Below, in pieces: positions 2,170 through 11,705 of a DNA stretch of 64,000 nucleotides (the stretch's first letter is position 1; every line of letters starts with the position of its first letter). Under the pieces are notes generated by a model. It had not been told where the DNA came from. It worked only from the letters and a program-made list of their open reading frames with translations, and ran no database searches. The translations under genes were made by a program, and so were the position numbers. The stretch is from the sequence record MG752970.1, one strand, 5' to 3'.

Positions 2170-2727
2170 ATGGCCACAAATAAGAATAAACCGACGGCAG
2201 AAAAGAAGACGAAGCGTGTCGACAGTCGTGCCAAGGGTGCTGGGTTTGAACGCACCCTATCAAAATTTCTATCTGAAAAATTGAACCCGCTTAAATTTAC
2301 CCGTTCTCAAATGTCTGGGGCGATTGTTGGTGGTGTGAATTACGAAAAGGTAGGAGCAAACTACAAGCGTGAAGCATTACGACTCTTTGTAGGTGATGTA
2401 GTTCCAACCAACGAAGGTGAAAATGGAATCAGTTTCAACTTCAGCGTTGAAGCGAAGTTCTATAAAACAGTTCCAACCATGAAGCAGTTGTTTGATGATA
2501 CGTGCCTCGTGTATGGTTGGATGGAAGAAGCCATAATTGATGCTGCGAAGCTCGATGTACATCCTATCGTAATATTCAAGTTCAACAACACTCCCATCTT
2601 TACTGCAACTCCCAGTCACATCGCCATTCCAGATGGAGTCAATCACACCAAGTTAAAAAATGGCATCAATGTTTGCATGCTAGATGATCTCATACAGCAT
2701 TTGGATTTTTGGGTTACCAAAGCATGA
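2170..2727 (+). CDS. Hjc-like PD-(D/E)XK Holliday junction resolvase
   Basis: KGAGFER motif, GDVV, VEAK catalytic motif; next to gp46/47. Confidence 0.75.
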   Translation: MATNKNKPTAEKKTKRVDSRAKGAGFERTLSKFLSEKLNPLKFTRSQMSGAIVGGVNYEKVGANYKREALRLFVGDVVPTNEGENGISFNFSVEAKFYKTVPTMKQLFDDTCLVYGWMEEAIIDAAKLDVHPIVIFKFNNTPIFTATPSHIAIPDGVNHTKLKNGINVCMLDDLIQHLDFWVTKA

Positions 2728-3365
2728 AAGAATCTAATGTGTATCGCACAAATGTGTATAGGGCTGCGGGCGTTGGGATGCTCGATTTAGTAGATAGATT
2801 AACTGGTAGTCTTCTAACATACAAATCTTTGGTTGACTATACCAGCCCACTAATCTCAAAGAATACCAACAATTCATTCTTCTACATATCGGATGATGAA
2901 CTGAAAGACAATGTGAAGAGACATCACTTAATGAACCCCATTATGTTCACCAAGATGATCTCTTCAACCGTCAAACATTTCAAAAATACGAAATATAGAG
3001 TAAAATTGGCAGAGCCACATCCACTTACTCATCGATCTTTTCAAATAGCATCCGATTTATTCACGCTAGATAAGATAGATACTAATGAATACCTAGATGG
3101 AGTAGGATCACGAAAGAGAAACTATACCGTCAAGAGTGTTCATCGGGTGTCAAGCTCACTAGTAGCCGATTTCTACATTGAAAACCTAAGAGATGGTTCT
3201 TATTCTCACCTGATTTTAAGACCAAAGTTTGGACATGGATCCGCCAAACTGACAGAATGGGAAGTCGTTATTCATAAAACAGTCCAAGATTCATACTTGA
3301 TCACCCACATTGACACCGATCTAGAGATCAAGGATCTTAAGCATTTCGCAAACAGAGGAATTTAA
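2724..3365 (+). CDS. Hypothetical protein, possibly TnpB N-terminal (REC/WED)-like, no RuvC domain
   Basis: ATGA overlap with resolvase stop supports start at 2724; TnpB resemblance is architectural only. Confidence 0.6.
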   Translation: MKESNVYRTNVYRAAGVGMLDLVDRLTGSLLTYKSLVDYTSPLISKNTNNSFFYISDDELKDNVKRHHLMNPIMFTKMISSTVKHFKNTKYRVKLAEPHPLTHRSFQIASDLFTLDKIDTNEYLDGVGSRKRNYTVKSVHRVSSSLVADFYIENLRDGSYSHLILRPKFGHGSAKLTEWEVVIHKTVQDSYLITHIDTDLEIKDLKHFANRGI

Positions 3366-3623
3366 ATGAACGCAAAGAAAGCAAAGCAACTACGCCGTAT
3401 GGCCCGTGAAGTAGCGCAAGCAGCTCAATTACCTGAAGGCGCCGTATACGATGAAAAGGAATATTTAGTTCCTAACATGCAGAAGTTTATGACCATGACT
3501 GAGCGGGAAGCAGAAGATCGTGCTAGAGTTACGGCACGCGATATTTCAGATGTACACGTCACCCGTACTCTGAATGCAGATTGCGAACGCGCTCTATATC
3601 AGCGCCTGAAAGCCGCTGTTTGA
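3366..3623 (+). CDS. Small basic hypothetical protein
   Basis: 85 aa ORF abutting upstream stop, followed by terminator. Confidence 0.75.
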   Translation: MNAKKAKQLRRMAREVAQAAQLPEGAVYDEKEYLVPNMQKFMTMTEREAEDRARVTARDISDVHVTRTLNADCERALYQRLKAAV

Positions 3624-3636
3624 TTTTTCTAAGAAT

Positions 3637-3664
3637 ATGGCACCATCCTGTGGTGCCATTCTTT
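3637..3664 (+). terminator. Intrinsic terminator
   Basis: ATGGCACCA-tcctg-TGGTGCCAT then TCTTT. Confidence 0.7.
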
Positions 3665-3679
3665 AAATTAAATCAAACA

Positions 3680-4170
3680 TCCGTTTCGCTGCCTTTGTCA
3701 GGATGCTAGTCACGAAACGATTCAAGTGAGTTCTTGAATGTAAAGATGGTTCATCGAACATATCGATGACGCTGAATAACCCAGTTACAAAATATAACAA
3801 AGAATTCAGGGAGCCGATCCAGTCAAACGGAGCCCCCTTGGTAGAGTAGCAGCCCTATGGTTATTGTAGAAGTTGCAGATGCTATCAAAAACAATCGAGC
3901 AAGCTAGAGACGGTTCTTGATATGGCGCAATGCTTAAAATGATGGTTGAATGTCCGTTACCATCAATGCTCGTATACTAAAACTCAAGTATATAAAATAT
4001 TCCAGATCAGCAAATACAGATTTTGCTGGATAACTAAATCGTTAATGGTTGCGATTTAGTGAAGATCGGCGTCAACGACACCACGCAAGAAGCACAACCG
4101 GTAAAGCGTTACCTGGACGGGTTGAAGAGAAATCTTCTGAAGTGCGAACCATTATTTGAAGCATCCCGAA
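3680..4170 (+). ncRNA. Candidate large structured non-coding RNA (strand not established)
   Basis: No credible ORF; many hairpins (3720-3739, 3751-3769, 3940-3965, 4008-4028, 4033-4060, 4095-4124, 4124-4137 with GAAA loop) and nested long-range complements 3701-3707/4160-4166 and 3746-3752/4146-4152. Confidence 0.4.
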
Positions 4171-4763
4171 TTTTTTGCGCCGAGGCAGGCGCTCTGGTGT
4201 TCCCCAATCGTCTTACGATTAAGATCGTAATCATTAAGAAGAAACAAAAATTCCCCATGACGATCATTGCAAGAACGAACGCCAGTGAGTGATGCAATGA
4301 GACGTCGAGCAAGCGACAGCTGCTCTGATCTAGTCGACTAGATCAATATTGTAGGAAGAAGTCACAAACCAAAGAATGAAATATACATGAGTTTGGACCT
4401 GCATTAAATAGAAATACATCCTGGCAGTACTTTAATGGAAACTGACTTAACTCACCAGTTTCCATTATTTTTGCGCCGGATCCGGCCAAATAGGCAAAAG
4501 GAGCGGCAAGAAGACACCGCTCAGCTATCGATCATGGCCGCTCACTGGCGTTCGCTTCCATTCCGAAGCTTGTGGGTTCTATCTGTCTATATTGGCAGCT
4601 GATACCCATCTGATCTATCTGGTGCATCTCCGTTCATTCCTGTCTCGAATTGACACATACCACATCATCCGTCTGACCCAATTCATCTGGACACCTCTGG
4701 AGAGGCCATGCCCAGTTGTTCAGAACTAGAAACTCGTTCCGGATCCTAAGATTTAGATAAGAG
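4170..4763. other. Palindrome/hairpin-rich non-coding element, origin-like or RNA switch
   Basis: 20-bp perfect palindrome 4326-4345, 12-bp stem 4433-4467, 14-nt complement 4276-4289/4541-4554, direct repeat TTTTTGCGCCG at 4172 and 4468. Confidence 0.5.
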
Positions 4764-4787
4764 AAAAGGAGCCTTTCGGCTCCTTTT
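4764..4787 (-). terminator. Intrinsic terminator for the gp26-like unit
   Basis: Minus strand AAAAGGAGCC-GAAA-GGCTCCTTTT, overlapping stop of the -1 frame extension. Confidence 0.85.
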
Positions 4788-5034
4788 ACAGTGATGCAAC
4801 CAGCTTTTCCATCCATGTCTTTCCTTTTATGATACCTTCTCGTTTCTTAGTTAGAAACTCAACGGCTAGTTCTCTTTCTGCAGCTGACATCATTAAGACG
4901 TCTTCGTATTTTAAGGAACCTTTTGAATAAAAGGAAATTTCTAGAGCACTCTTGATTAGATTTTCCGTATCCTTTGCAAAATAGCTGATTGTTCTCGTGA
5001 TTAGATGATAATCACGAGACCGTATTACTCGGAA
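4786..5034 (-). CDS. -1 frame extension of gp26-like chaperone (82 aa, missed by ORF track)
   Basis: Open -1 frame after T9 run: FRVIRSRDY...ISFYSKGSLKYEDVLMMSAAERE...LVASL*, no Met in its first 47 codons; ends in a terminator. Confidence 0.7.
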   Translation of the reverse strand, partial: FRVIRSRDYHLITRTISYFAKDTENLIKSALEISFYSKGSLKYEDVLMMSAAERELAVEFLTKKREGIIKGKTWMEKLVASL

Positions 5035-5825
5035 AAAAAAACTATCGGGTTGGTTGGGAGATCAACTTGGAATGGCTGTCCACAATCCTTGCAAGTCAAT
5101 GTGACTTGCTGCTGAGTTCCCCACGCTGAGGCGTTTTCAATGGCTGAACCAATCAAATTCACATCCTTGGTGCTCAGATATCTAGCCCATTCACCAATCA
5201 TTGCCTTATCTGTGACGTTGTCCACAGAGTATATGATTGAGCATAGATTTTTTAGAATGTTGTCTTGAATATCTTCAACACTGGTTTCAGAATCTAATCC
5301 ACCTTGAGCTGAACGCTGCATTAGCTCTACTAGATTCTTATAACGTAGTGGCTCAAGCTTTACACTCTGACCGGTACTAATTGTCACGGTTGACTGCTCG
5401 TTGATTGTGGTTGGATCTAATTCGCGAATGTTCTTTACGAACTCATCAAGATCTACTTCGTAAGAATGTGATTCGGCTTTCTCACAATTATGCTCTGCGT
5501 CGACAGAAAATTTTGAACCGTACGTTGCAACTCTTAGGAAGACCATCAGTGCATCAACATCTTTACCAAATAGTTCATTAGGTTTCTTGATGTCTGGAAT
5601 GCACTCTGCGAAGACTTCATCGATTGCTCTACCAGAGAACAACATGTCGATGTTCTTGAGTTTAATTTCCGCTATAGCCGAAAGTGGATGAACGTGGACT
5701 TCGCCATTTGCTACGTTAGGTCCTAGTTCACCGTTTTGATACAAGTGGCCACCAGATGGAAGCTTGAACACTCGTCCAGGTAGTTTAATTTTTGCTAGGA
5801 GGGGGTTTGTAATTGCTGAATCCAT
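5025..5825 (-). CDS. gp26: gp26-like baseplate hub / tail assembly chaperone
   Basis: LPSGGHLY N-terminus, VFLRVATYG, internal HNC and C-terminal CKDC zinc-like motif; adjacent to tape measure. Confidence 0.75.
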   Translation of the reverse strand: MDSAITNPLLAKIKLPGRVFKLPSGGHLYQNGELGPNVANGEVHVHPLSAIAEIKLKNIDMLFSGRAIDEVFAECIPDIKKPNELFGKDVDALMVFLRVATYGSKFSVDAEHNCEKAESHSYEVDLDEFVKNIRELDPTTINEQSTVTISTGQSVKLEPLRYKNLVELMQRSAQGGLDSETSVEDIQDNILKNLCSIIYSVDNVTDKAMIGEWARYLSTKDVNLIGSAIENASAWGTQQQVTLTCKDCGQPFQVDLPTNPIVFFSE

Positions 5826-9101: not shown

Positions 9102-10826
9102 ATGGGAACACTCACGAATTACTACCGAATAGTCCAACCAGCGTCACCGAAACAAGCATACACTACAACAGATAATGAGCTTGTTTCACGCTATCAGAAC
9201 TATTCATGGTACAACGCTGTCGTAAAGTCAGCATCTACAAGACTCGCACGTTACAAACAATATGAGATGATGGATCGTGACGTGGATATTTCACGTGCAC
9301 TTGATACCATTTCTGAAGAAATGTCTACGGTGGATGAAAAGACGCATCTACCATTTCTCATCTCATATCAGAATGACGATAACGTAGAGGTTAACGAACG
9401 CTTGGTCATGACGATCAAGGCTGCCCTCCGTCATTGGTGTGATCTTCAGGATTTATACAATAGAATTTTCAGAACATGTCGCACCACCGCGAAGATGGGA
9501 GATTGCTTCTTTAGAAAAACAAGCGACCATCGTAAGTGGGAATATATCGATCCATCACTCATTTATGGTGTTGAGATGGATGAAAAAGGTGTGATCATTG
9601 CATATCATGTCAGAATGCTTGGTGCTTCTGGTACCGGTAATTCAACAGAACAAATGCAAATCATTCCGGCTGAAGGAATGATTCACTTTACGTTATCTGA
9701 TGACATGTCATCCATTGCTCCATTTGGTGATTCATTGCTTGAACCGGTTGTGAAGGTATTCAAGCAGATGACTCTACTTGAGGATGCAGTAGTTATCTAT
9801 CGTATCGTAAGAGCACCAGAACGTCGTGTATTTTACCTCGATGTAGGTGGAATGCCTCCTCACAAGGTTAAGGCGTATCTAGAATCGGTCAAGACTGAAA
9901 TGTATCAGAAACGTTTCGCCAATGAAATGGGTGGTGAAGCACAGGTTGACTCCGCATACAATCCTCAATCAATGACTCAAGACTTCTTCATGGCCACAAC
10001 GTCTGAAGGTCGTGGTACAAAGATTGAAACTCTACCAGCTGGTGAGCAGCTTGGTGAAATTACAGATCTTACATACTTCCAAAACCGCGTTGCACGCGGT
10101 CTCCGTGTTCCTACATCATACTTGAACTCTCAAGGCCAAGGGTCAGGTCAATACACTGATGGTAAGGTTGGTATCGCATACATTGAAGAACTTCGATTTG
10201 CAAACTTCGTTAAGCGTCTGCAAAACAAGGTTGAGAAGGTTTATGATCGCCAGTTCAAGGCGTATCTAGATGCATCTGGTATCAAGATTGATCATAATCT
10301 GTTTAAGCTGCAGTTACCAGAACCACAAAACTTTGCATTGTACCGTCAAGCAGCTATTGATGCTGAGCTCATCAATACGTTCAATACCGCTGAAAACATT
10401 CAGTATCTATCCAAGAGATACATTCTCAAGAGATTCCTTGGATTCACTGAAGATGATATTCAAACAAATGAAGCGATGCTACGTCAAGAGCGCAACATTC
10501 CAGACACGACTAACTTGGATGATCCTCCAATTACTGACATTCAACTCATGTACGATCCAGCAATTTACAGCGATCGTAAGGTGGATGTTCCGTCATTCGG
10601 TGGAGGAGGTGGCGGAGCTAGTGGATTCGGTGGAGGAGGAATGGATTTAGGTTCATCTCCATCTGACCTTGGTTTAGAAGAACCGGGTGGTGAGGGTGGT
10701 GCGGGTAAACCAGAGGGAGAAGCTCCTGAAGGTGGAGAATCACCAGAAGCTCCAACAGATACTGGTCCTGAGCTAGAAGCACCTGCAGCGCCAGAACCTG
10801 CTCCAGAAGCTCCACCACCAGTGTAA
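9102..10826 (+). CDS. gp20: Portal protein
   Basis: EDAVVIYRIVRAPERRVFYLDVGGMP, QDFFM, GTKIETLPAG, VPTSYL, EELRFANFV motifs of T4 gp20; acidic Gly/Pro tail. Confidence 0.96.
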   Translation: MGTLTNYYRIVQPASPKQAYTTTDNELVSRYQNYSWYNAVVKSASTRLARYKQYEMMDRDVDISRALDTISEEMSTVDEKTHLPFLISYQNDDNVEVNERLVMTIKAALRHWCDLQDLYNRIFRTCRTTAKMGDCFFRKTSDHRKWEYIDPSLIYGVEMDEKGVIIAYHVRMLGASGTGNSTEQMQIIPAEGMIHFTLSDDMSSIAPFGDSLLEPVVKVFKQMTLLEDAVVIYRIVRAPERRVFYLDVGGMPPHKVKAYLESVKTEMYQKRFANEMGGEAQVDSAYNPQSMTQDFFMATTSEGRGTKIETLPAGEQLGEITDLTYFQNRVARGLRVPTSYLNSQGQGSGQYTDGKVGIAYIEELRFANFVKRLQNKVEKVYDRQFKAYLDASGIKIDHNLFKLQLPEPQNFALYRQAAIDAELINTFNTAENIQYLSKRYILKRFLGFTEDDIQTNEAMLRQERNIPDTTNLDDPPITDIQLMYDPAIYSDRKVDVPSFGGGGGGASGFGGGGMDLGSSPSDLGLEEPGGEGGAGKPEGEAPEGGESPEAPTDTGPELEAPAAPEPAPEAPPPV

Positions 10827-10860
10827 GTTTCAAATTTGAAGTAATAACCCCAATCTTAGA

Positions 10861-10867
10861 ATAAATA
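10861..10867 (+). promoter_or_regulatory. Late promoter box ATAAATA
   Basis: Directly upstream of GGAG RBS of 10881 ORF. Confidence 0.65.
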
Positions 10868-10880
10868 GGAGATTAGATAA

Positions 10881-11033
10881 ATGGATAAGCAAAAACTGAA
10901 TGACTTCGTCAAGCACATGATCAATGATAACGAGGAAGGCATGCAAGCCGCTTTCCACGATTATCTGAAAGGCAAGATGCGACAGGTCCTCGATAAAGTA
11001 GAACCAAAGCAAGACAGCCCAATGGAACAATAA
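10881..11033 (+). CDS. gp67-like prohead core protein (50 aa, below ORF-track cutoff)
   Basis: MDKQKLNDFVKHMINDNEEGMQAAFHDYLKGKMRQVL...; GGAG RBS; position between portal and protease as T4 67/68. Confidence 0.7.
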   Translation: MDKQKLNDFVKHMINDNEEGMQAAFHDYLKGKMRQVLDKVEPKQDSPMEQ

Positions 11034-11072
11034 GCTGGTGGTTATGCCACCAGTTACGATAAGGAGAATTAA

Positions 11073-11705
11073 GTGATTAAGCAACAAATTCTGATTGAGG
11101 AATTGACGCCAGTTCAATCCAATATCATCACCGAATCTGTATCTGGTGGTAAGGATCTGTATCTGCAAGGTATTTTCATGCAGGCAGAGTGTGTTAATGG
11201 CAATGGACGTAACTATCCAGTTGAAGAAATTGCCGCAGCAGTAAAGTACGTTAATGAAAAGATTGCTGAAGGTGTTTCAATCTGCGGTGAACTTAATCAC
11301 CCATCAGATTTGGCGATCAACCTAGAGCGTGTATCACACGTTATCACTGAAATGCACATGGAAGGTAATGATGCTATTGGTAAGGCAAAGCTTTTGAACA
11401 CCCCAATGGGTAACATTGCTAAAGCTCTTATCGATGGTGGAGTTCGTATCGGTGTTTCTTCACGTGGTACTGGTGAAGTTAATGAGGGTGTTGTATCTGG
11501 TTTCCAATTTGTTACAGTGGATATCGTTTCAACTCCGTCTGCTCCAAATGCTTTCCCATCAGTTATTTCAGAAAGCATGCAGCGCATTCAGGACGACCGT
11601 CGTATCGTCACTCTTGCTGAACACGTTTGTAATGACAAGGATGCTCAAAAGTACCTAGCAAAGGCGCTTAAGGGTTTCATTGAACAGCTTCGCAACGGTT
11701 ACTAA
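11073..11705 (+). CDS. gp21: Prohead protease
   Basis: LQGIFMQA, NGNGRNYP, GELNHP, VSH, GVSSRGTG, DIVSTPSAPNA; GTG start with AAGGAG RBS. Confidence 0.96.
   Translation: MIKQQILIEELTPVQSNIITESVSGGKDLYLQGIFMQAECVNGNGRNYPVEEIAAAVKYVNEKIAEGVSICGELNHPSDLAINLERVSHVITEMHMEGNDAIGKAKLLNTPMGNIAKALIDGGVRIGVSSRGTGEVNEGVVSGFQFVTVDIVSTPSAPNAFPSVISESMQRIQDDRRIVTLAEHVCNDKDAQKYLAKALKGFIEQLRNGY

What the first reader, a model, noticed from the sequence alone, without database searches (positions are those of the whole stretch)
4170..4763. Palindrome, loop-distal pairing and alternative stems: origin or conformational switch
Seen: an 8-bp stem (4264-4271/4293-4300) exposes CGAACGCCAGTGAG (4276-4289) in its loop, perfectly complementary to 4541-4554, i.e. 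a possible pseudoknot over 250 nt. GAGCGG (4501-4506) can pair with either CCGCTC 4517-4522 or 4538-4543, the latter overlapping the pseudoknot strand. Also a 20-bp perfect palindrome (4326-4345), overlapping exclusive hairpins (4206-4230) and an 11-bp direct repeat. Inference: reminiscent of primer-RNA/pseudoknot control in plasmid origins; position next to gp46/47 and a resolvase fits a replication/recombination origin.
Basis: partly seen in the sequence, partly recalled or inferred. Interest (0 to 1): 0.7.

Follow-up and report, generated by a model that had tools for sequence, protein, structure and literature searches.

The report
Conserved structured RNA, jumbo phage
The flagged stems and the long-range pairing are real and form the 3' part of an unannotated, strongly conserved structured non-coding RNA (about 0.8-1.1 kb) of Ralstonia jumbo phage RsoM2USA and its metagenomic relatives; it lies just downstream of a TnpB/Cas12f-like RNA-binding protein that has no nuclease domain, and nothing points to a replication origin.

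Summary
The window is Ralstonia phage RsoM2USA. The finding lies in a 1.4-kb unannotated gap between convergent genes.

All the sequence features are present at the stated coordinates. The 14-nt inverted repeat is the only one of its size in 64 kb (4/2000 local shuffles).

Metagenomic relatives show that the gap is a conserved, probably plus-strand, structured RNA. It matches no Rfam family.
- Positions 3700-4200 are 90-96% identical where flanking genes are about 70-75%.
- Twelve lineages share a core with strong covariation.
- Hairpins 4264-4300, 4433-4467, 4501-4522 and 4764-4787 keep pairing through compensatory changes.

Each claimed feature fared differently.
- The loop-distal pairing is conserved as 13 bp plus a bulge, without covariation. 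Its 3' arm lies in a 3' domain (4473-4763) found only in the RsoM2USA group.
- The 20-bp palindrome and the alternative GAGCGG pairing are not conserved.
- The 11-bp repeat is probably chance.
- No origin feature was found: no iterons, no DnaA boxes, no diagnostic GC skew.

Two genes upstream on the same strand, a 213-aa protein folds (pLDDT 91) like the WED-REC RNA-binding lobe of TnpB/Cas12f and lacks RuvC. This suggests an RNA-protein module.

The RNA's ends, promoter and function are not established. The scan has not reported this on other DNA. Notes on this same window had suggested the RNA and the TnpB-like lobe.

The parts
2170..2727 (+). PD-(D/E)xK / RusA-like nuclease gene, first gene of the conserved set upstream of the RNA
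   Evidence: Pfam PF24608 E 5e-20; PHROG 244 RusA-like resolvase. Same position in all relatives.
2724..3365 (+). 213-aa protein with the fold of the TnpB/Cas12f WED-REC (RNA-binding) lobe, with no RuvC or zinc-finger part
   Evidence: AlphaFold2 model pLDDT 91, pTM 0.86. An exhaustive PDB scan gives 34 top hits that are all Cas12/TnpB/Fanzor, Z up to 10.5; model residues 1-186 align on ISDra2 TnpB 1-174. Foldseek E 3e-4. No Pfam, PHROG or PDB sequence hit.
3366..3623 (+). 85-aa basic protein gene, always directly upstream of the RNA
   Evidence: Conserved N- and C-terminal basic segments in 11 lineages.
3637..3669 (+). intrinsic terminator-like hairpin of the upstream operon; the conserved RNA region starts right after it
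   Evidence: The outer pair changes A-T to C-G in L014 by eye; my fixed-register count mis-scored it because L014 has a 1-nt insertion.
3660..4472 (+). main body of the structured RNA (ends are approximate and not mapped)
   Evidence: 90-96% identity to a relative whose flanking genes are about 70-75% identical. Core 4031-4198 is found in 12 lineages at E 1e-27 or better, with covariation.
4177..4192 (+). hairpin GCGCC-loop-GGCGC; distant relatives have GNRA tetraloops (GCAA, GAAA) here
   Evidence: One compensatory T-A to A-T change. The competing AATCGT/ACGATT stem never varies, so it is untested.
4264..4300 (+). hairpin Ha: 8-bp stem (4264-4271/4293-4300) with an invariant 21-nt loop
   Evidence: Three pairs changed on both sides in the L014/L016 lineages, all 8 pairs kept.
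4276..4289 (+). 5' arm of the 14-nt complementarity, inside the Ha loop; part of a motif that recurs in most distant relatives
   Evidence: Invariant in close relatives. Related motif ACGAGCGACAGCGAGUGA in distant relatives.
4326..4345 (+). 20-bp palindrome, probably a peripheral hairpin
   Evidence: Perfect only in RsoM2USA and the L004 group; two central mismatches in L014/L016.
4433..4472 (+). hairpin T1: 12-bp stem, invariant 11-nt loop, then U5; candidate leaky terminator or internal structural hairpin
   Evidence: One compensatory A-U to G-C change. Its distance from hairpin 4177-4192 matches the length of the 3' half in distant relatives.
4473..4763 (+). 3' domain specific to the RsoM2USA group; non-coding and fast-evolving, with conserved islands
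   Evidence: 0.337 substitutions per nt, no 3-periodicity (p 0.75), indels not in threes. Absent from distant relatives.
4501..4522 (+). hairpin GAGCGG/CCGCTC
   Evidence: Three pairs changed on both sides. The alternative partner 4538-4543 is broken in L014/L016.
4541..4554 (+). 3' arm of the 14-nt complementarity
   Evidence: Conserved island. All relatives lack one G, which leaves 13 bp plus one bulged C. Duplex free energy -22.7 to -33.2 kcal/mol against a background mean of -7.
4478..4485 (+). GGAUCCGG, which can pair with CCGGAUCC at 4739-4746 and so close the 3' domain
   Evidence: Both copies invariant in a variable region; no covariation.
4533..4539 (+). CAUGGCC, which can pair with GGCCAUG at 4704-4710
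   Evidence: In L014/L016 a one-sided C-to-U change keeps a G.U pair on the + strand, and one pair is lost.
4764..4787 (.). bidirectional terminator T2 shared with the convergent hub operon
   Evidence: Two compensatory changes; terminator scan.

Best explanation
Positions 4170-4763 are the 3' portion of a non-coding, highly structured RNA gene. It is transcribed from the + strand of the 1.4-kb gap between the recombination-gene operon (ending at 3623) and the baseplate-hub operon on the opposite strand.

Shown:
- The gap does not code for protein.
- It is much more conserved than its flanks.
- Many of its helices are kept by compensatory changes across 12 phage lineages.

Inferred layout:
- The RNA body runs from about 3660 to hairpin T1 (4433-4472).
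- The stretch 4473-4763 is an extra 3' domain present only in the RsoM2USA group. It ends at the bidirectional terminator T2 (4764-4787).

The hairpin at 4264-4300 displays a motif in its loop. That motif recurs in most distant relatives, so it is probably a functional contact site.

In the RsoM2USA group the extra domain carries the complement of that motif at 4541-4554. My most likely mechanism is as follows. A short RNA that ends at T1 leaves the loop free. A transcript that reads through to T2 lets the distal strand pair with the loop. That pairing would be either a long-range kissing or pseudoknot contact, or a switch that replaces the hairpin stem, and it would mask the motif.

A 213-aa protein encoded two genes upstream on the same strand has the fold of the RNA-binding WED-REC lobe of TnpB/Cas12f. 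I therefore infer that this RNA is its bound partner, in the way that guide RNAs lie downstream of tnpB and tldR genes. The region is not a replication origin.
For: Identity and setting. The window is RsoM2USA at 100% identity. The gap is unannotated between convergent genes.

Non-coding. There is no ORF longer than 92 codons from stop to stop. Substitutions show no 3-periodicity in 4170-4472 (p 0.82) or 4473-4763 (p 0.75). The control 4790-5024 gives p 1.5e-5. Indels are not in threes.

Conservation. Positions 3700-4200 are 90-96% identical to L015 and 4201-4500 are about 80%. The flanking genes are about 70-75%.

Structure. The + strand fold has z = -8.35.

Compensatory changes in the finding region:
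- 3 in stem 4264-4271/4293-4300
- 1 in T1
- 3 in 4501-4522
- 2 in T2
- 1 in 4213-4230

Family.
- The covariance model finds the core in all 12 lineages at E 1e-27 or better.
- 98.6% of cells are paired against 87.5% in shuffles (0/500). The covariation score is 0.362 against 0.139. Slid controls give 26-47%.
- 25 of 62 pairs in the 5' half have changes on both sides.

Strand.
- One-sided changes keep G.U pairs on the + strand.
- The family alignment folds better in + sense: -65.5 against -60.1 kcal/mol, with 4 against 20 A.C mismatch cells.
- Distant relatives have GNRA loops.
- Hairpins with U-tracts lie at the 3' end.

Loop-distal pairing.
- It is unique in the window; 4/2000 local shuffles match it.
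- Both arms are conserved.
- Duplex free energy is -33.2, -26.1, -22.7 and -23.5 kcal/mol. The background mean is -7 and the background minimum -18.
- In nested folding the long-range helix wins in RsoM2USA and L016. The hairpin wins in L004 and L014. The hairpin also forms when the RNA is cut at T1.

Expression hint. In a root metatranscriptome, one 246-nt contig covers 4049-4295. The only other piece laid on the 5.9-kb stretch is a 37-nt part (3221-3257) of an otherwise unlike 518-nt contig. Eight RNA libraries hold words of the core.

Protein partner.. The synteny nuclease / WED-REC protein / small basic protein / RNA holds in all lineages examined. TldR and TnpB guide RNAs are encoded downstream of their genes (bioRxiv 10.1101/2023.11.30.569447, read).
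Against: - No transcript ends, promoter or direct RNA evidence exist for RsoM2USA itself. No late-promoter motif (ATAAATA) lies in the gap, and no sigma-70-like site was found upstream.
- The metatranscriptome evidence is thin: word depth 2.4, and the run was chosen because it holds this sequence.
- The loop-distal pairing has no covariation. Both arms are invariant apart from a 1-nt indel that weakens it in every relative.
- A 14-bp helix inside a 21-nt closed loop is sterically strained.
- Only three or four effective lineages cover 4170-4763.
- Alignments of the close group alone do not tell the two strands apart.
- Distant relatives carry the loop motif but no complement, so the pairing cannot be essential to the family's core function.
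- The link to the WED-REC protein rests on fold and gene order only. An 85-aa gene and a terminator lie between that gene and the RNA.
- At 0.65-1.1 kb the RNA is far larger than known TnpB guide RNAs, and no guide segment was identified.
- The protein-RNA complex job was not folded.
Confidence: 0.72

Rival explanations
1. There are two RNAs. The main structured RNA ends at T1. The stretch 4473-4787 is a separate small RNA, or a processed fragment, whose conserved CUCACU(G)GCGUUCG pairs in trans with the loop of hairpin 4264-4300. This would regulate the main RNA as sense-antisense kissing hairpins do in plasmid copy control.
For: - T1 looks like a terminator: a hairpin followed by U5.
- The 3' domain evolves at a different rate (0.337 against 0.149 substitutions per nt).
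- The 3' domain has its own closing helices.
- The reverse complement of the hairpin aligns to the distal segment, including part of the stem (TCATKGC). This would fit an old inverted duplication of the hairpin (weak).
Against: - No promoter-like site lies between T1 and 4500.
- The T1 stem is A+U-rich and has an 11-nt invariant loop, which is atypical for an efficient terminator.
- There are no expression data.
Confidence: 0.12
2. The region is a replication origin. A transcript forms a persistent R-loop or primer, as at T4 oriF/oriG or ColE1, and the stems and the long-range pairing control primer formation.
For: - It lies next to recombination and replication genes.
- An A+T-rich 60-nt patch lies at 3965-4024 (G+C 0.267, 1.2th percentile of the genome). 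This is outside the finding.
- A secondary local minimum of cumulative GC skew lies at 245-250 kb.
Against: - There are no iterons and no DnaA boxes.
- The finding region is G+C-richer than the genome.
- The global skew minimum is at about 180 kb. The local one coincides with a change of gene orientation.
- The A+T-rich patch itself holds a hairpin whose stem sequence differs between lineages (by eye).
- Conservation extends over about 1.1 kb with GNRA loops and covariation, far beyond what known phage origins need.
Confidence: 0.05
3. These are DNA-level sites. The palindromes (TGATCTAGTCGACTAGATCA, CCGGATCCGG) and inverted repeats would be binding or cleavage sites for dimeric proteins, such as a resolvase, a homing endonuclease or a repressor, or cruciforms used in recombination.
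For: - Perfect palindromes are over-represented (5 against 0.09 expected).
- Homing endonuclease genes insert nearby in relatives.
- CCGGATCC occurs twice and is invariant.
Against: - The 20-bp palindrome is broken by two symmetric mismatches in L014/L016.
- One-sided changes preserve G.U pairs on one strand only, and A.C mismatches are few in + sense.
- The stem sequences change while the loops stay fixed, which is the reverse of what a sequence-specific protein site would show.
Confidence: 0.05
4. This is ordinary intergenic DNA between two convergent terminators. The pairings are chance and the conservation is due to recent recombination between relatives.
For: Phage genomes are mosaic. The 11-bp repeat and the alternative GAGCGG pairing do look like chance.
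Against: Homologous sequence with compensatory changes is found in phages whose hub protein is only about 50% identical. The fold z-score is -8.35.
Confidence: 0.02

Closest known systems
Guide RNAs (omega/reRNA, gRNA) of TnpB and of nuclease-dead TnpB derivatives (TldR)
   Same: A structured RNA is encoded downstream of, and on the same strand as, a gene whose product has the TnpB WED-REC fold. TldRs include phage-encoded, C-terminally truncated forms that lack RuvC and the zinc finger and still use a downstream gRNA (10.1101/2023.11.30.569447).
   Different: - The protein here is only the WED-REC lobe (213 aa) and has no sequence link to TnpB.
- An 85-aa gene and a terminator separate it from the RNA.
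- The RNA is 0.65-1.1 kb, against roughly 100-250 nt.
- No Rfam family matches, and no 3' guide segment or target was found.
- Binding is not shown.
Large ornate bacterial and phage RNAs (GOLLD, ROOL, OLE, HEARO)
   Same: Several hundred nucleotides to about 1 kb, many covarying helices, GNRA loops, long-range and kissing contacts, frequent association with phages, function unknown (PMC5737381, PMC12286853; the titles and abstracts appeared, the rest is my own knowledge).
   Different: No sequence or structure match to any of them. The family is restricted to a clade of T4-like jumbo phages and has a fixed gene neighbourhood. Oligomerisation is untested.
ColE1-type RNA I / RNA II kissing control of primer formation
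   Same: A hairpin loop has a perfectly complementary partner sequence, and the competing folds have similar energy.
   Different: Here both strands of the pairing lie on the same strand of the same locus, 251 nt apart. No antisense promoter, origin or primer site is evident.
T4 origins oriF and oriG (middle promoter plus DNA-unwinding element forming an R-loop)
   Same: The host is a T4-like phage, and a transcribed non-coding stretch lies near replication and recombination genes.
   Different: There is no unwinding element inside the finding. The 1.1 kb of covarying RNA structure is not a feature of those origins (established knowledge of T4).
Intrinsic terminators and read-through attenuators
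   Same: T2 is a classic bidirectional terminator with compensatory changes. T1 is a hairpin followed by U5.
   Different: T1 has a long, invariant loop and a weak stem. Whether it terminates is untested.

Membership tests
Structured non-coding RNA gene (general criteria) | No conserved reading frame | tested here: met
Structured non-coding RNA gene (general criteria) | Helices kept by compensatory substitutions across relatives, above shuffled and slid controls | tested here: met
Structured non-coding RNA gene (general criteria) | A stable transcript with defined ends | tested here: inconclusive
   One 246-nt metatranscriptome contig at 4049-4295, plus words of the core in 8 RNA libraries. 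There are no data for RsoM2USA itself.
Any described RNA family (Rfam 15) | Covariance-model match | tested here: not met
   No hit at the gathering threshold in 64 kb. Only chance-level hits at E up to 10 in 3500-5200. No tRNA or tmRNA.
TnpB/TldR guide RNA | Encoded next to, downstream of and on the same strand as a TnpB-family gene | tested here: met
   The WED-REC fold protein at 2724-3365 and the RNA from about 3660 lie on the same strand, with one small gene between them.
TnpB/TldR guide RNA | A scaffold of about 100-250 nt followed by a variable 3' guide that matches a target next to a TAM | tested here: not met
   The RNA is 0.65-1.1 kb. No guide-like variable 3' segment was identified. 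The phage genome holds no perfect copy of the loop motif's complement other than 4541-4554, only one 2-mismatch match at record position 10783. Distant relatives have none in their loci.
TnpB/TldR guide RNA | Physical binding to the protein | not testable with these tools
   The complex job was not folded.
TnpB / Cas12 protein family (neighbouring gene) | WED and REC domains with TnpB topology | tested here: met
   Z up to 10.5. The top 34 of 48,161 PDB representatives are all Cas12/TnpB/Fanzor.
TnpB / Cas12 protein family (neighbouring gene) | RuvC nuclease domain and zinc-finger/TNB domain | tested here: not met
   The protein ends after the WED barrel (213 aa). All 43 family representatives are 56-241 aa, most of them 190-241.
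Iteron or DnaA-box replication origin | Tandem iterons, DnaA boxes and an adjacent A+T-rich unwinding element | tested here: not met
   No tandem repeats. No DnaA box with up to 1 mismatch, and the finding region has G+C 0.454 against 0.414 for the genome.
T4-type R-loop origin (oriF/oriG) | A middle-mode promoter followed by a DNA-unwinding element | tested here: inconclusive
   No promoter was recognised. One A+T-rich patch lies at 3965-4024, outside the finding and inside covarying RNA structure. The middle-promoter consensus of this phage is unknown.
ColE1-type primer RNA control | An antisense RNA gene opposite the primer RNA and an origin downstream | tested here: not met
   No promoter-like site on the - strand inside 4170-4763. 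Both complementary segments lie on the same strand.
Intrinsic terminator | A G+C-rich hairpin followed by a U-tract, conserved by compensation | tested here: met
   T2 at 4764-4787. T1 at 4433-4472 meets the criterion only partly: its stem is A+U-rich and its loop is 11 nt.

The most novel reading that the evidence does not exclude
The RNA is the cognate RNA of a new, split TnpB-derived system of jumbo phages. A stand-alone WED-REC protein, with no RuvC, would bind this large RNA. The adjacent PD-(D/E)xK/RusA-like nuclease or the 85-aa basic protein would act as a separate effector or cofactor. This would give an RNA-guided or RNA-scaffolded nucleic-acid-targeting complex. In that reading the motif shown in the loop of hairpin 4264-4300, which recurs in most relatives, is the recognition (guide-like) element. 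The complementary 4541-4554 in the RsoM2USA group would then be a built-in decoy or autoregulatory target.
Probability: 0.2. Interest if true: 0.92.

Novelty: new variant of a known kind. Interest (0 to 1): 0.72.

Why it matters
The region adds a large structured RNA class that matches no Rfam family. It has clear covariation and a fixed gene neighbourhood, and it occurs in a cultivable phage, RsoM2USA. I found no homologue of the RNA in any other cultured phage searched, so the RNA can be tested at the bench.

A stand-alone TnpB/Cas12f-like WED-REC protein sits beside it. If the two work together, this would be a further and more drastic domestication of the TnpB scaffold than the nuclease-dead TldR repressors: the RNA-binding lobe alone, next to a separate PD-(D/E)xK nuclease. 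It would also give a concrete case for asking what large phage RNAs do.

For annotation, it shows that a 1.4-kb 'empty' gap in a published jumbo-phage genome is among its most conserved stretches.

Tried and rejected
RNA and DNA searches that found nothing
- Rfam at the gathering threshold and at E up to 10, and tRNA/tmRNA: nothing.
- blastn against 50,697 phage records: only RsoM2USA itself.
- tblastn of the genes that follow the hub gene in XacN1 and Xoo-sp13 against the window: no decayed gene in the gap.
- IMG/VR search by hub protein: nothing. DNA patterns found 4 contigs, two of them already held. A pattern scan of GTDB genomes found nothing.
- Covariance model R1 did not reach L018, XacN1 or Xoo-sp13. 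By eye, L018 does hold a diverged core.

Alignment
- mafft X-INS-i and Q-INS-i are not installed. The E-INS-i alignment of the 3' halves of the distant relatives was too poor for a consensus structure. The homology between the RsoM2USA 3' half and theirs therefore rests on motifs seen by eye.

Promoters
- Only the late motif NATAAATA is enriched genome-wide, and it is absent from the gap.
- A sigma-70-like TTGACA-N17-CATATT lies after the upstream terminator in one relative (L084) only, seen by eye.

Targets of the loop motif
- No other perfect complementary site in the phage genome. No complement in the loci of distant relatives.

Inverted duplication
- Inverted duplication of the hairpin as the source of the inverted repeat: the local alignment adds little beyond the 14-mer (score 30 against 28).

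Neighbouring 213-aa protein
- No Pfam, PHROG or PDB-sequence hit.
- The Atlas gave only noise-level scores.

Complex prediction
- The protein plus RNA 4003-4200 job was counted but not folded. It is no evidence either way.

Readings considered and rejected
- Group I or II intron, RNase P RNA, tmRNA, 6S RNA, retron RNA or a CRISPR array: no model match, no reverse transcriptase, no repeats.
- A small protein gene: ORFs 4059-4292 and 4435-4602 are broken by 1-nt indels in relatives.
Full report
**Where the finding lies.** The window matches Ralstonia phage RsoM2USA (MG752970.1) at 100% identity; window coordinate = record coordinate minus 248,000. The finding sits in a 1,401-nt stretch with no annotated gene (3624-5024).
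- To the left is a + strand operon: a gp46-like gene (317-2059), a PD-(D/E)xK/RusA-like nuclease (2170-2727), a 213-aa protein (2724-3365) and an 85-aa protein (3366-3623).
- To the right is the - strand gene for a gp26-like baseplate hub protein (5025-5825).
- The genome paper mentions neither a non-coding RNA nor an origin (PMC8504454).

**The observation.**
- The 14-nt perfect inverted repeat (4276-4289 / 4541-4554) is the only one of 14 nt or more with a loop of 600 nt or less in the 64-kb window. Shuffles give 0.18 per window. Within the gap, 4 of 2000 shuffles have one.
- Perfect 20-bp palindromes occur five times, against 0.09 expected.
- Region 4170-4790 folds with z = -8.35 on the + strand and -4.65 on the - strand.

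**Relatives.** No cultured phage shares this DNA. The nearest cultured relatives, XacN1 and Xoo-sp13, have hub proteins only 32-33% identical to the RsoM2USA protein.

A protein search found metagenomic contigs with hub proteins 98%, 79% and about 50% identical. They have the same gene order and the same non-coding gap.

In the close group (L004-L007 and L014-L016) the gap aligns end to end. Identity to L015 is:
- 90-96% over 3700-4200
- about 80% over 4201-4500
- 61% over 4501-4700
- about 70-75% in the flanking genes

**Not coding.** Substitutions show no codon periodicity in 4170-4472 or 4473-4763. The control 4790-5024 is strongly periodic. Indels are single nucleotides.

**What happens to each claimed feature in relatives**.
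- Stem 4264-4271/4293-4300: all eight pairs are kept through three double substitutions. Its 21-nt loop is invariant.
- Hairpin 4433-4444/4456-4467 (T1, followed by U5): one compensatory change, and an invariant 11-nt loop.
- Hairpin 4501-4506/4517-4522: three compensatory changes.
- Terminator 4764-4787 (T2): two compensatory changes.
- Hairpin 4213-4219/4224-4230: one compensatory change. The competing stem AATCGT/ACGATT never varies, so it is untested.
- The 20-bp palindrome has two central mismatches in L014/L016.
- The alternative pairing of GAGCGG with 4538-4543 is broken there.
- The 11-bp direct repeat is inexact in all relatives.
- The loop-distal pairing: both arms are conserved, but every relative lacks one G in the 3' arm. 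That includes three further metagenome contigs. The result is 13 bp with one bulged C, and there is no covariation.

The 3' arm is a conserved island in a stretch that otherwise changes at 0.337 substitutions per site.

**A family of structured RNAs.** The core, 4031-4198, is recognisable in phages whose hub protein is only about 50% identical.
- A covariance model finds it at E 1e-27 or better in all 12 lineages examined.
- 98.6% of cells are paired against 87.5% in shuffles (0/500). The covariation score is 0.362 against 0.139, and slid controls give 26-47%.
- In the 5' half of ten distant members, 25 of 62 predicted pairs show changes on both sides.
- By eye, the hairpin at 3940-3965 in RsoM2USA keeps a conserved loop (AAUGUCC) while its stem sequence differs in each lineage.
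- Distant members have GNRA tetraloops where RsoM2USA has the hairpin 4177-4192.

The + strand is favoured. One-sided changes keep G.U pairs on it. The family alignment folds better in + sense and has fewer A.C mismatches.

The RNA matches no Rfam family. It is absent from the XacN1 and Xoo-sp13 genomes and from a pattern scan of GTDB genomes.

**Layout of the finding region.**
- In distant relatives the RNA is about 630-700 nt. It starts right after the terminator of the upstream operon. It ends in a hairpin with a U-rich tail next to the small ORF that follows the hub gene.
- The distance from the hairpin 4177-4192 to that end is 221-285 nt in those relatives where I could place the end. In RsoM2USA, T1 ends 296 nt after it and T2 614 nt after it.
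- So 4473-4763 is an extra domain of the RsoM2USA group.
- That domain has conserved candidate helices of its own: GGAUCCGG/CCGGAUCC, CAUGGCC/GGCCAUG and CCUC/GAGG.
- The loop motif of hairpin 4264-4300 recurs in most distant relatives as ACGAGCGACAGCGAGUGA. None of them carries a complement. The only perfect complement in the RsoM2USA genome is 4541-4554.

**Energetics**.
- The loop-distal duplex has -22.7 to -33.2 kcal/mol. The background mean is -7 and the best background value -18.
- In nested folding, the long-range helix replaces the hairpin in RsoM2USA and L016 (probability about 0.9). The hairpin wins in L004 and L014.
- The hairpin forms in all four when the RNA stops at T1.

This is what one expects of a switch, or of a pseudoknot or kissing contact that nested folding cannot draw.

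**Expression.** A root metatranscriptome holds one 246-nt contig covering 4049-4295. The only other piece laid on the 5.9-kb stretch is a 37-nt part of an otherwise unlike contig. Eight RNA libraries hold words of the core. This is weak evidence, because the run was selected for holding this sequence. I could not identify a promoter.

**The origin idea.**
- No iterons and no DnaA boxes.
- The finding region has above-average G+C.
- The cumulative GC skew has its global minimum near 180 kb. Its small local minimum at 245-250 kb coincides with the switch of gene orientation.
- An A+T-rich patch at 3965-4024 lies outside the finding and inside covarying RNA structure.

I put an origin at about 5%.

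**An unexpected neighbour.** The 213-aa protein encoded at 2724-3365 has no sequence-level family.
- With a 40-sequence alignment it gives a confident model (pLDDT 91, pTM 0.86).
- In an exhaustive comparison with 48,161 PDB representatives, the top 34 matches are all Cas12-family, TnpB or Fanzor proteins (Z up to 10.5). Unrelated chains begin at Z 3.2.
- Model residues 1-186 lie on residues 1-174 of ISDra2 TnpB. I take these to be its WED and REC domains, which in TnpB hold the guide RNA (own knowledge) (Foldseek; an earlier, poorer model agreed).
- The protein stops before any RuvC or zinc-finger part. All 43 representative clusters of its family are 56-241 aa, most of them 190-241.
- Nuclease-dead, C-terminally truncated TnpB derivatives that still use a downstream guide RNA are known, some of them in phages (10.1101/2023.11.30.569447).

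The gene order is nuclease, WED-REC protein, small basic protein, structured RNA, all on one strand. It is conserved in every lineage examined that carries the RNA.

I infer, but have not shown, that the RNA is this protein's partner. A first-stage note on this window (s1-162189) had guessed a TnpB-like lobe; the fold result supports that guess.

**Verdict.** The region belongs to a new structured RNA family whose function is unknown. The family may form a new kind of TnpB-derived ribonucleoprotein.

Noticed in passing
window 4786-5061 (- strand): Positions 4790-5024 are protein-coding on the - strand by substitution periodicity (10/14/38, p 1.5e-5, no indels), yet they are unannotated. The stop-to-stop frame overlaps the end of the hub gene by 37 nt, including an invariant A9 run (T9 on the coding strand) at about 5033-5041. 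This could be a frameshift extension of the hub protein or a separate small gene; relatives have 42-70-aa ORF calls there. It bears on first-stage note s1-160250.
   Followed up: partly
window 2724-3365 (+): A 213-aa 'hypothetical protein' has the WED-REC fold of TnpB/Cas12f without RuvC. It belongs to a family of about 43 clusters of mostly 190-241-aa proteins in metagenomes.
   Followed up: yes
window 3895-3909 and 4305-4319; 3966-3971: UCGAGCAAGC occurs twice. The first copy can pair with UGCUCG at 3966-3971, and the second follows hairpin 4264-4300. In distant relatives the motif ACGAGCGACAGCGAGUGA can likewise pair with the 3' strand (UCRCUCGG) of the corresponding helix, at an energy equal to or better than that of the normal 5' strand. 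This may be a second, family-wide alternative pairing.
   Followed up: partly
L018:8041-9221 (- strand); L002:9900-10596; L003:9854-10537: A more distant relative (L018) has a 1,181-nt ORF-free gap at the same place. By eye it holds a diverged copy of the RNA core (GGUAAAG ... GGAGAAAUCCUGAAGUGUGA) that the covariance model missed. XacN1 and Xoo-sp13 have 0.5-0.7-kb gaps a few genes away with no detectable homology.
   Followed up: partly
L014:9620-10357; L019:8023-8628 and 10698-11450; L112:793-1296: GIY-YIG/NUMOD3 homing-endonuclease genes are inserted at different points of this gene block in different relatives. One lies between the hub gene and the RNA in L019.
   Followed up: no
L019, L020, L084-L089 (upstream of the PD-(D/E)xK gene): An Acb1-family (anti-CBASS) gene sits next to the nuclease gene in the distant relatives but not in RsoM2USA.
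   Followed up: no
whole RsoM2USA genome: The only 8-mers strongly enriched upstream of genes are variants of NATAAATA, like the T4 late promoter. No early or middle promoter motif emerged from a simple k-mer count.
   Followed up: partly
window 2081, 20270, 56168, 63197: Four further perfect 20-bp palindromes occur in the window, against 0.09 expected. The one at 2081 lies over a GC-rich hairpin followed by a T-run and looks like a terminator. The other three were not examined.
   Followed up: no
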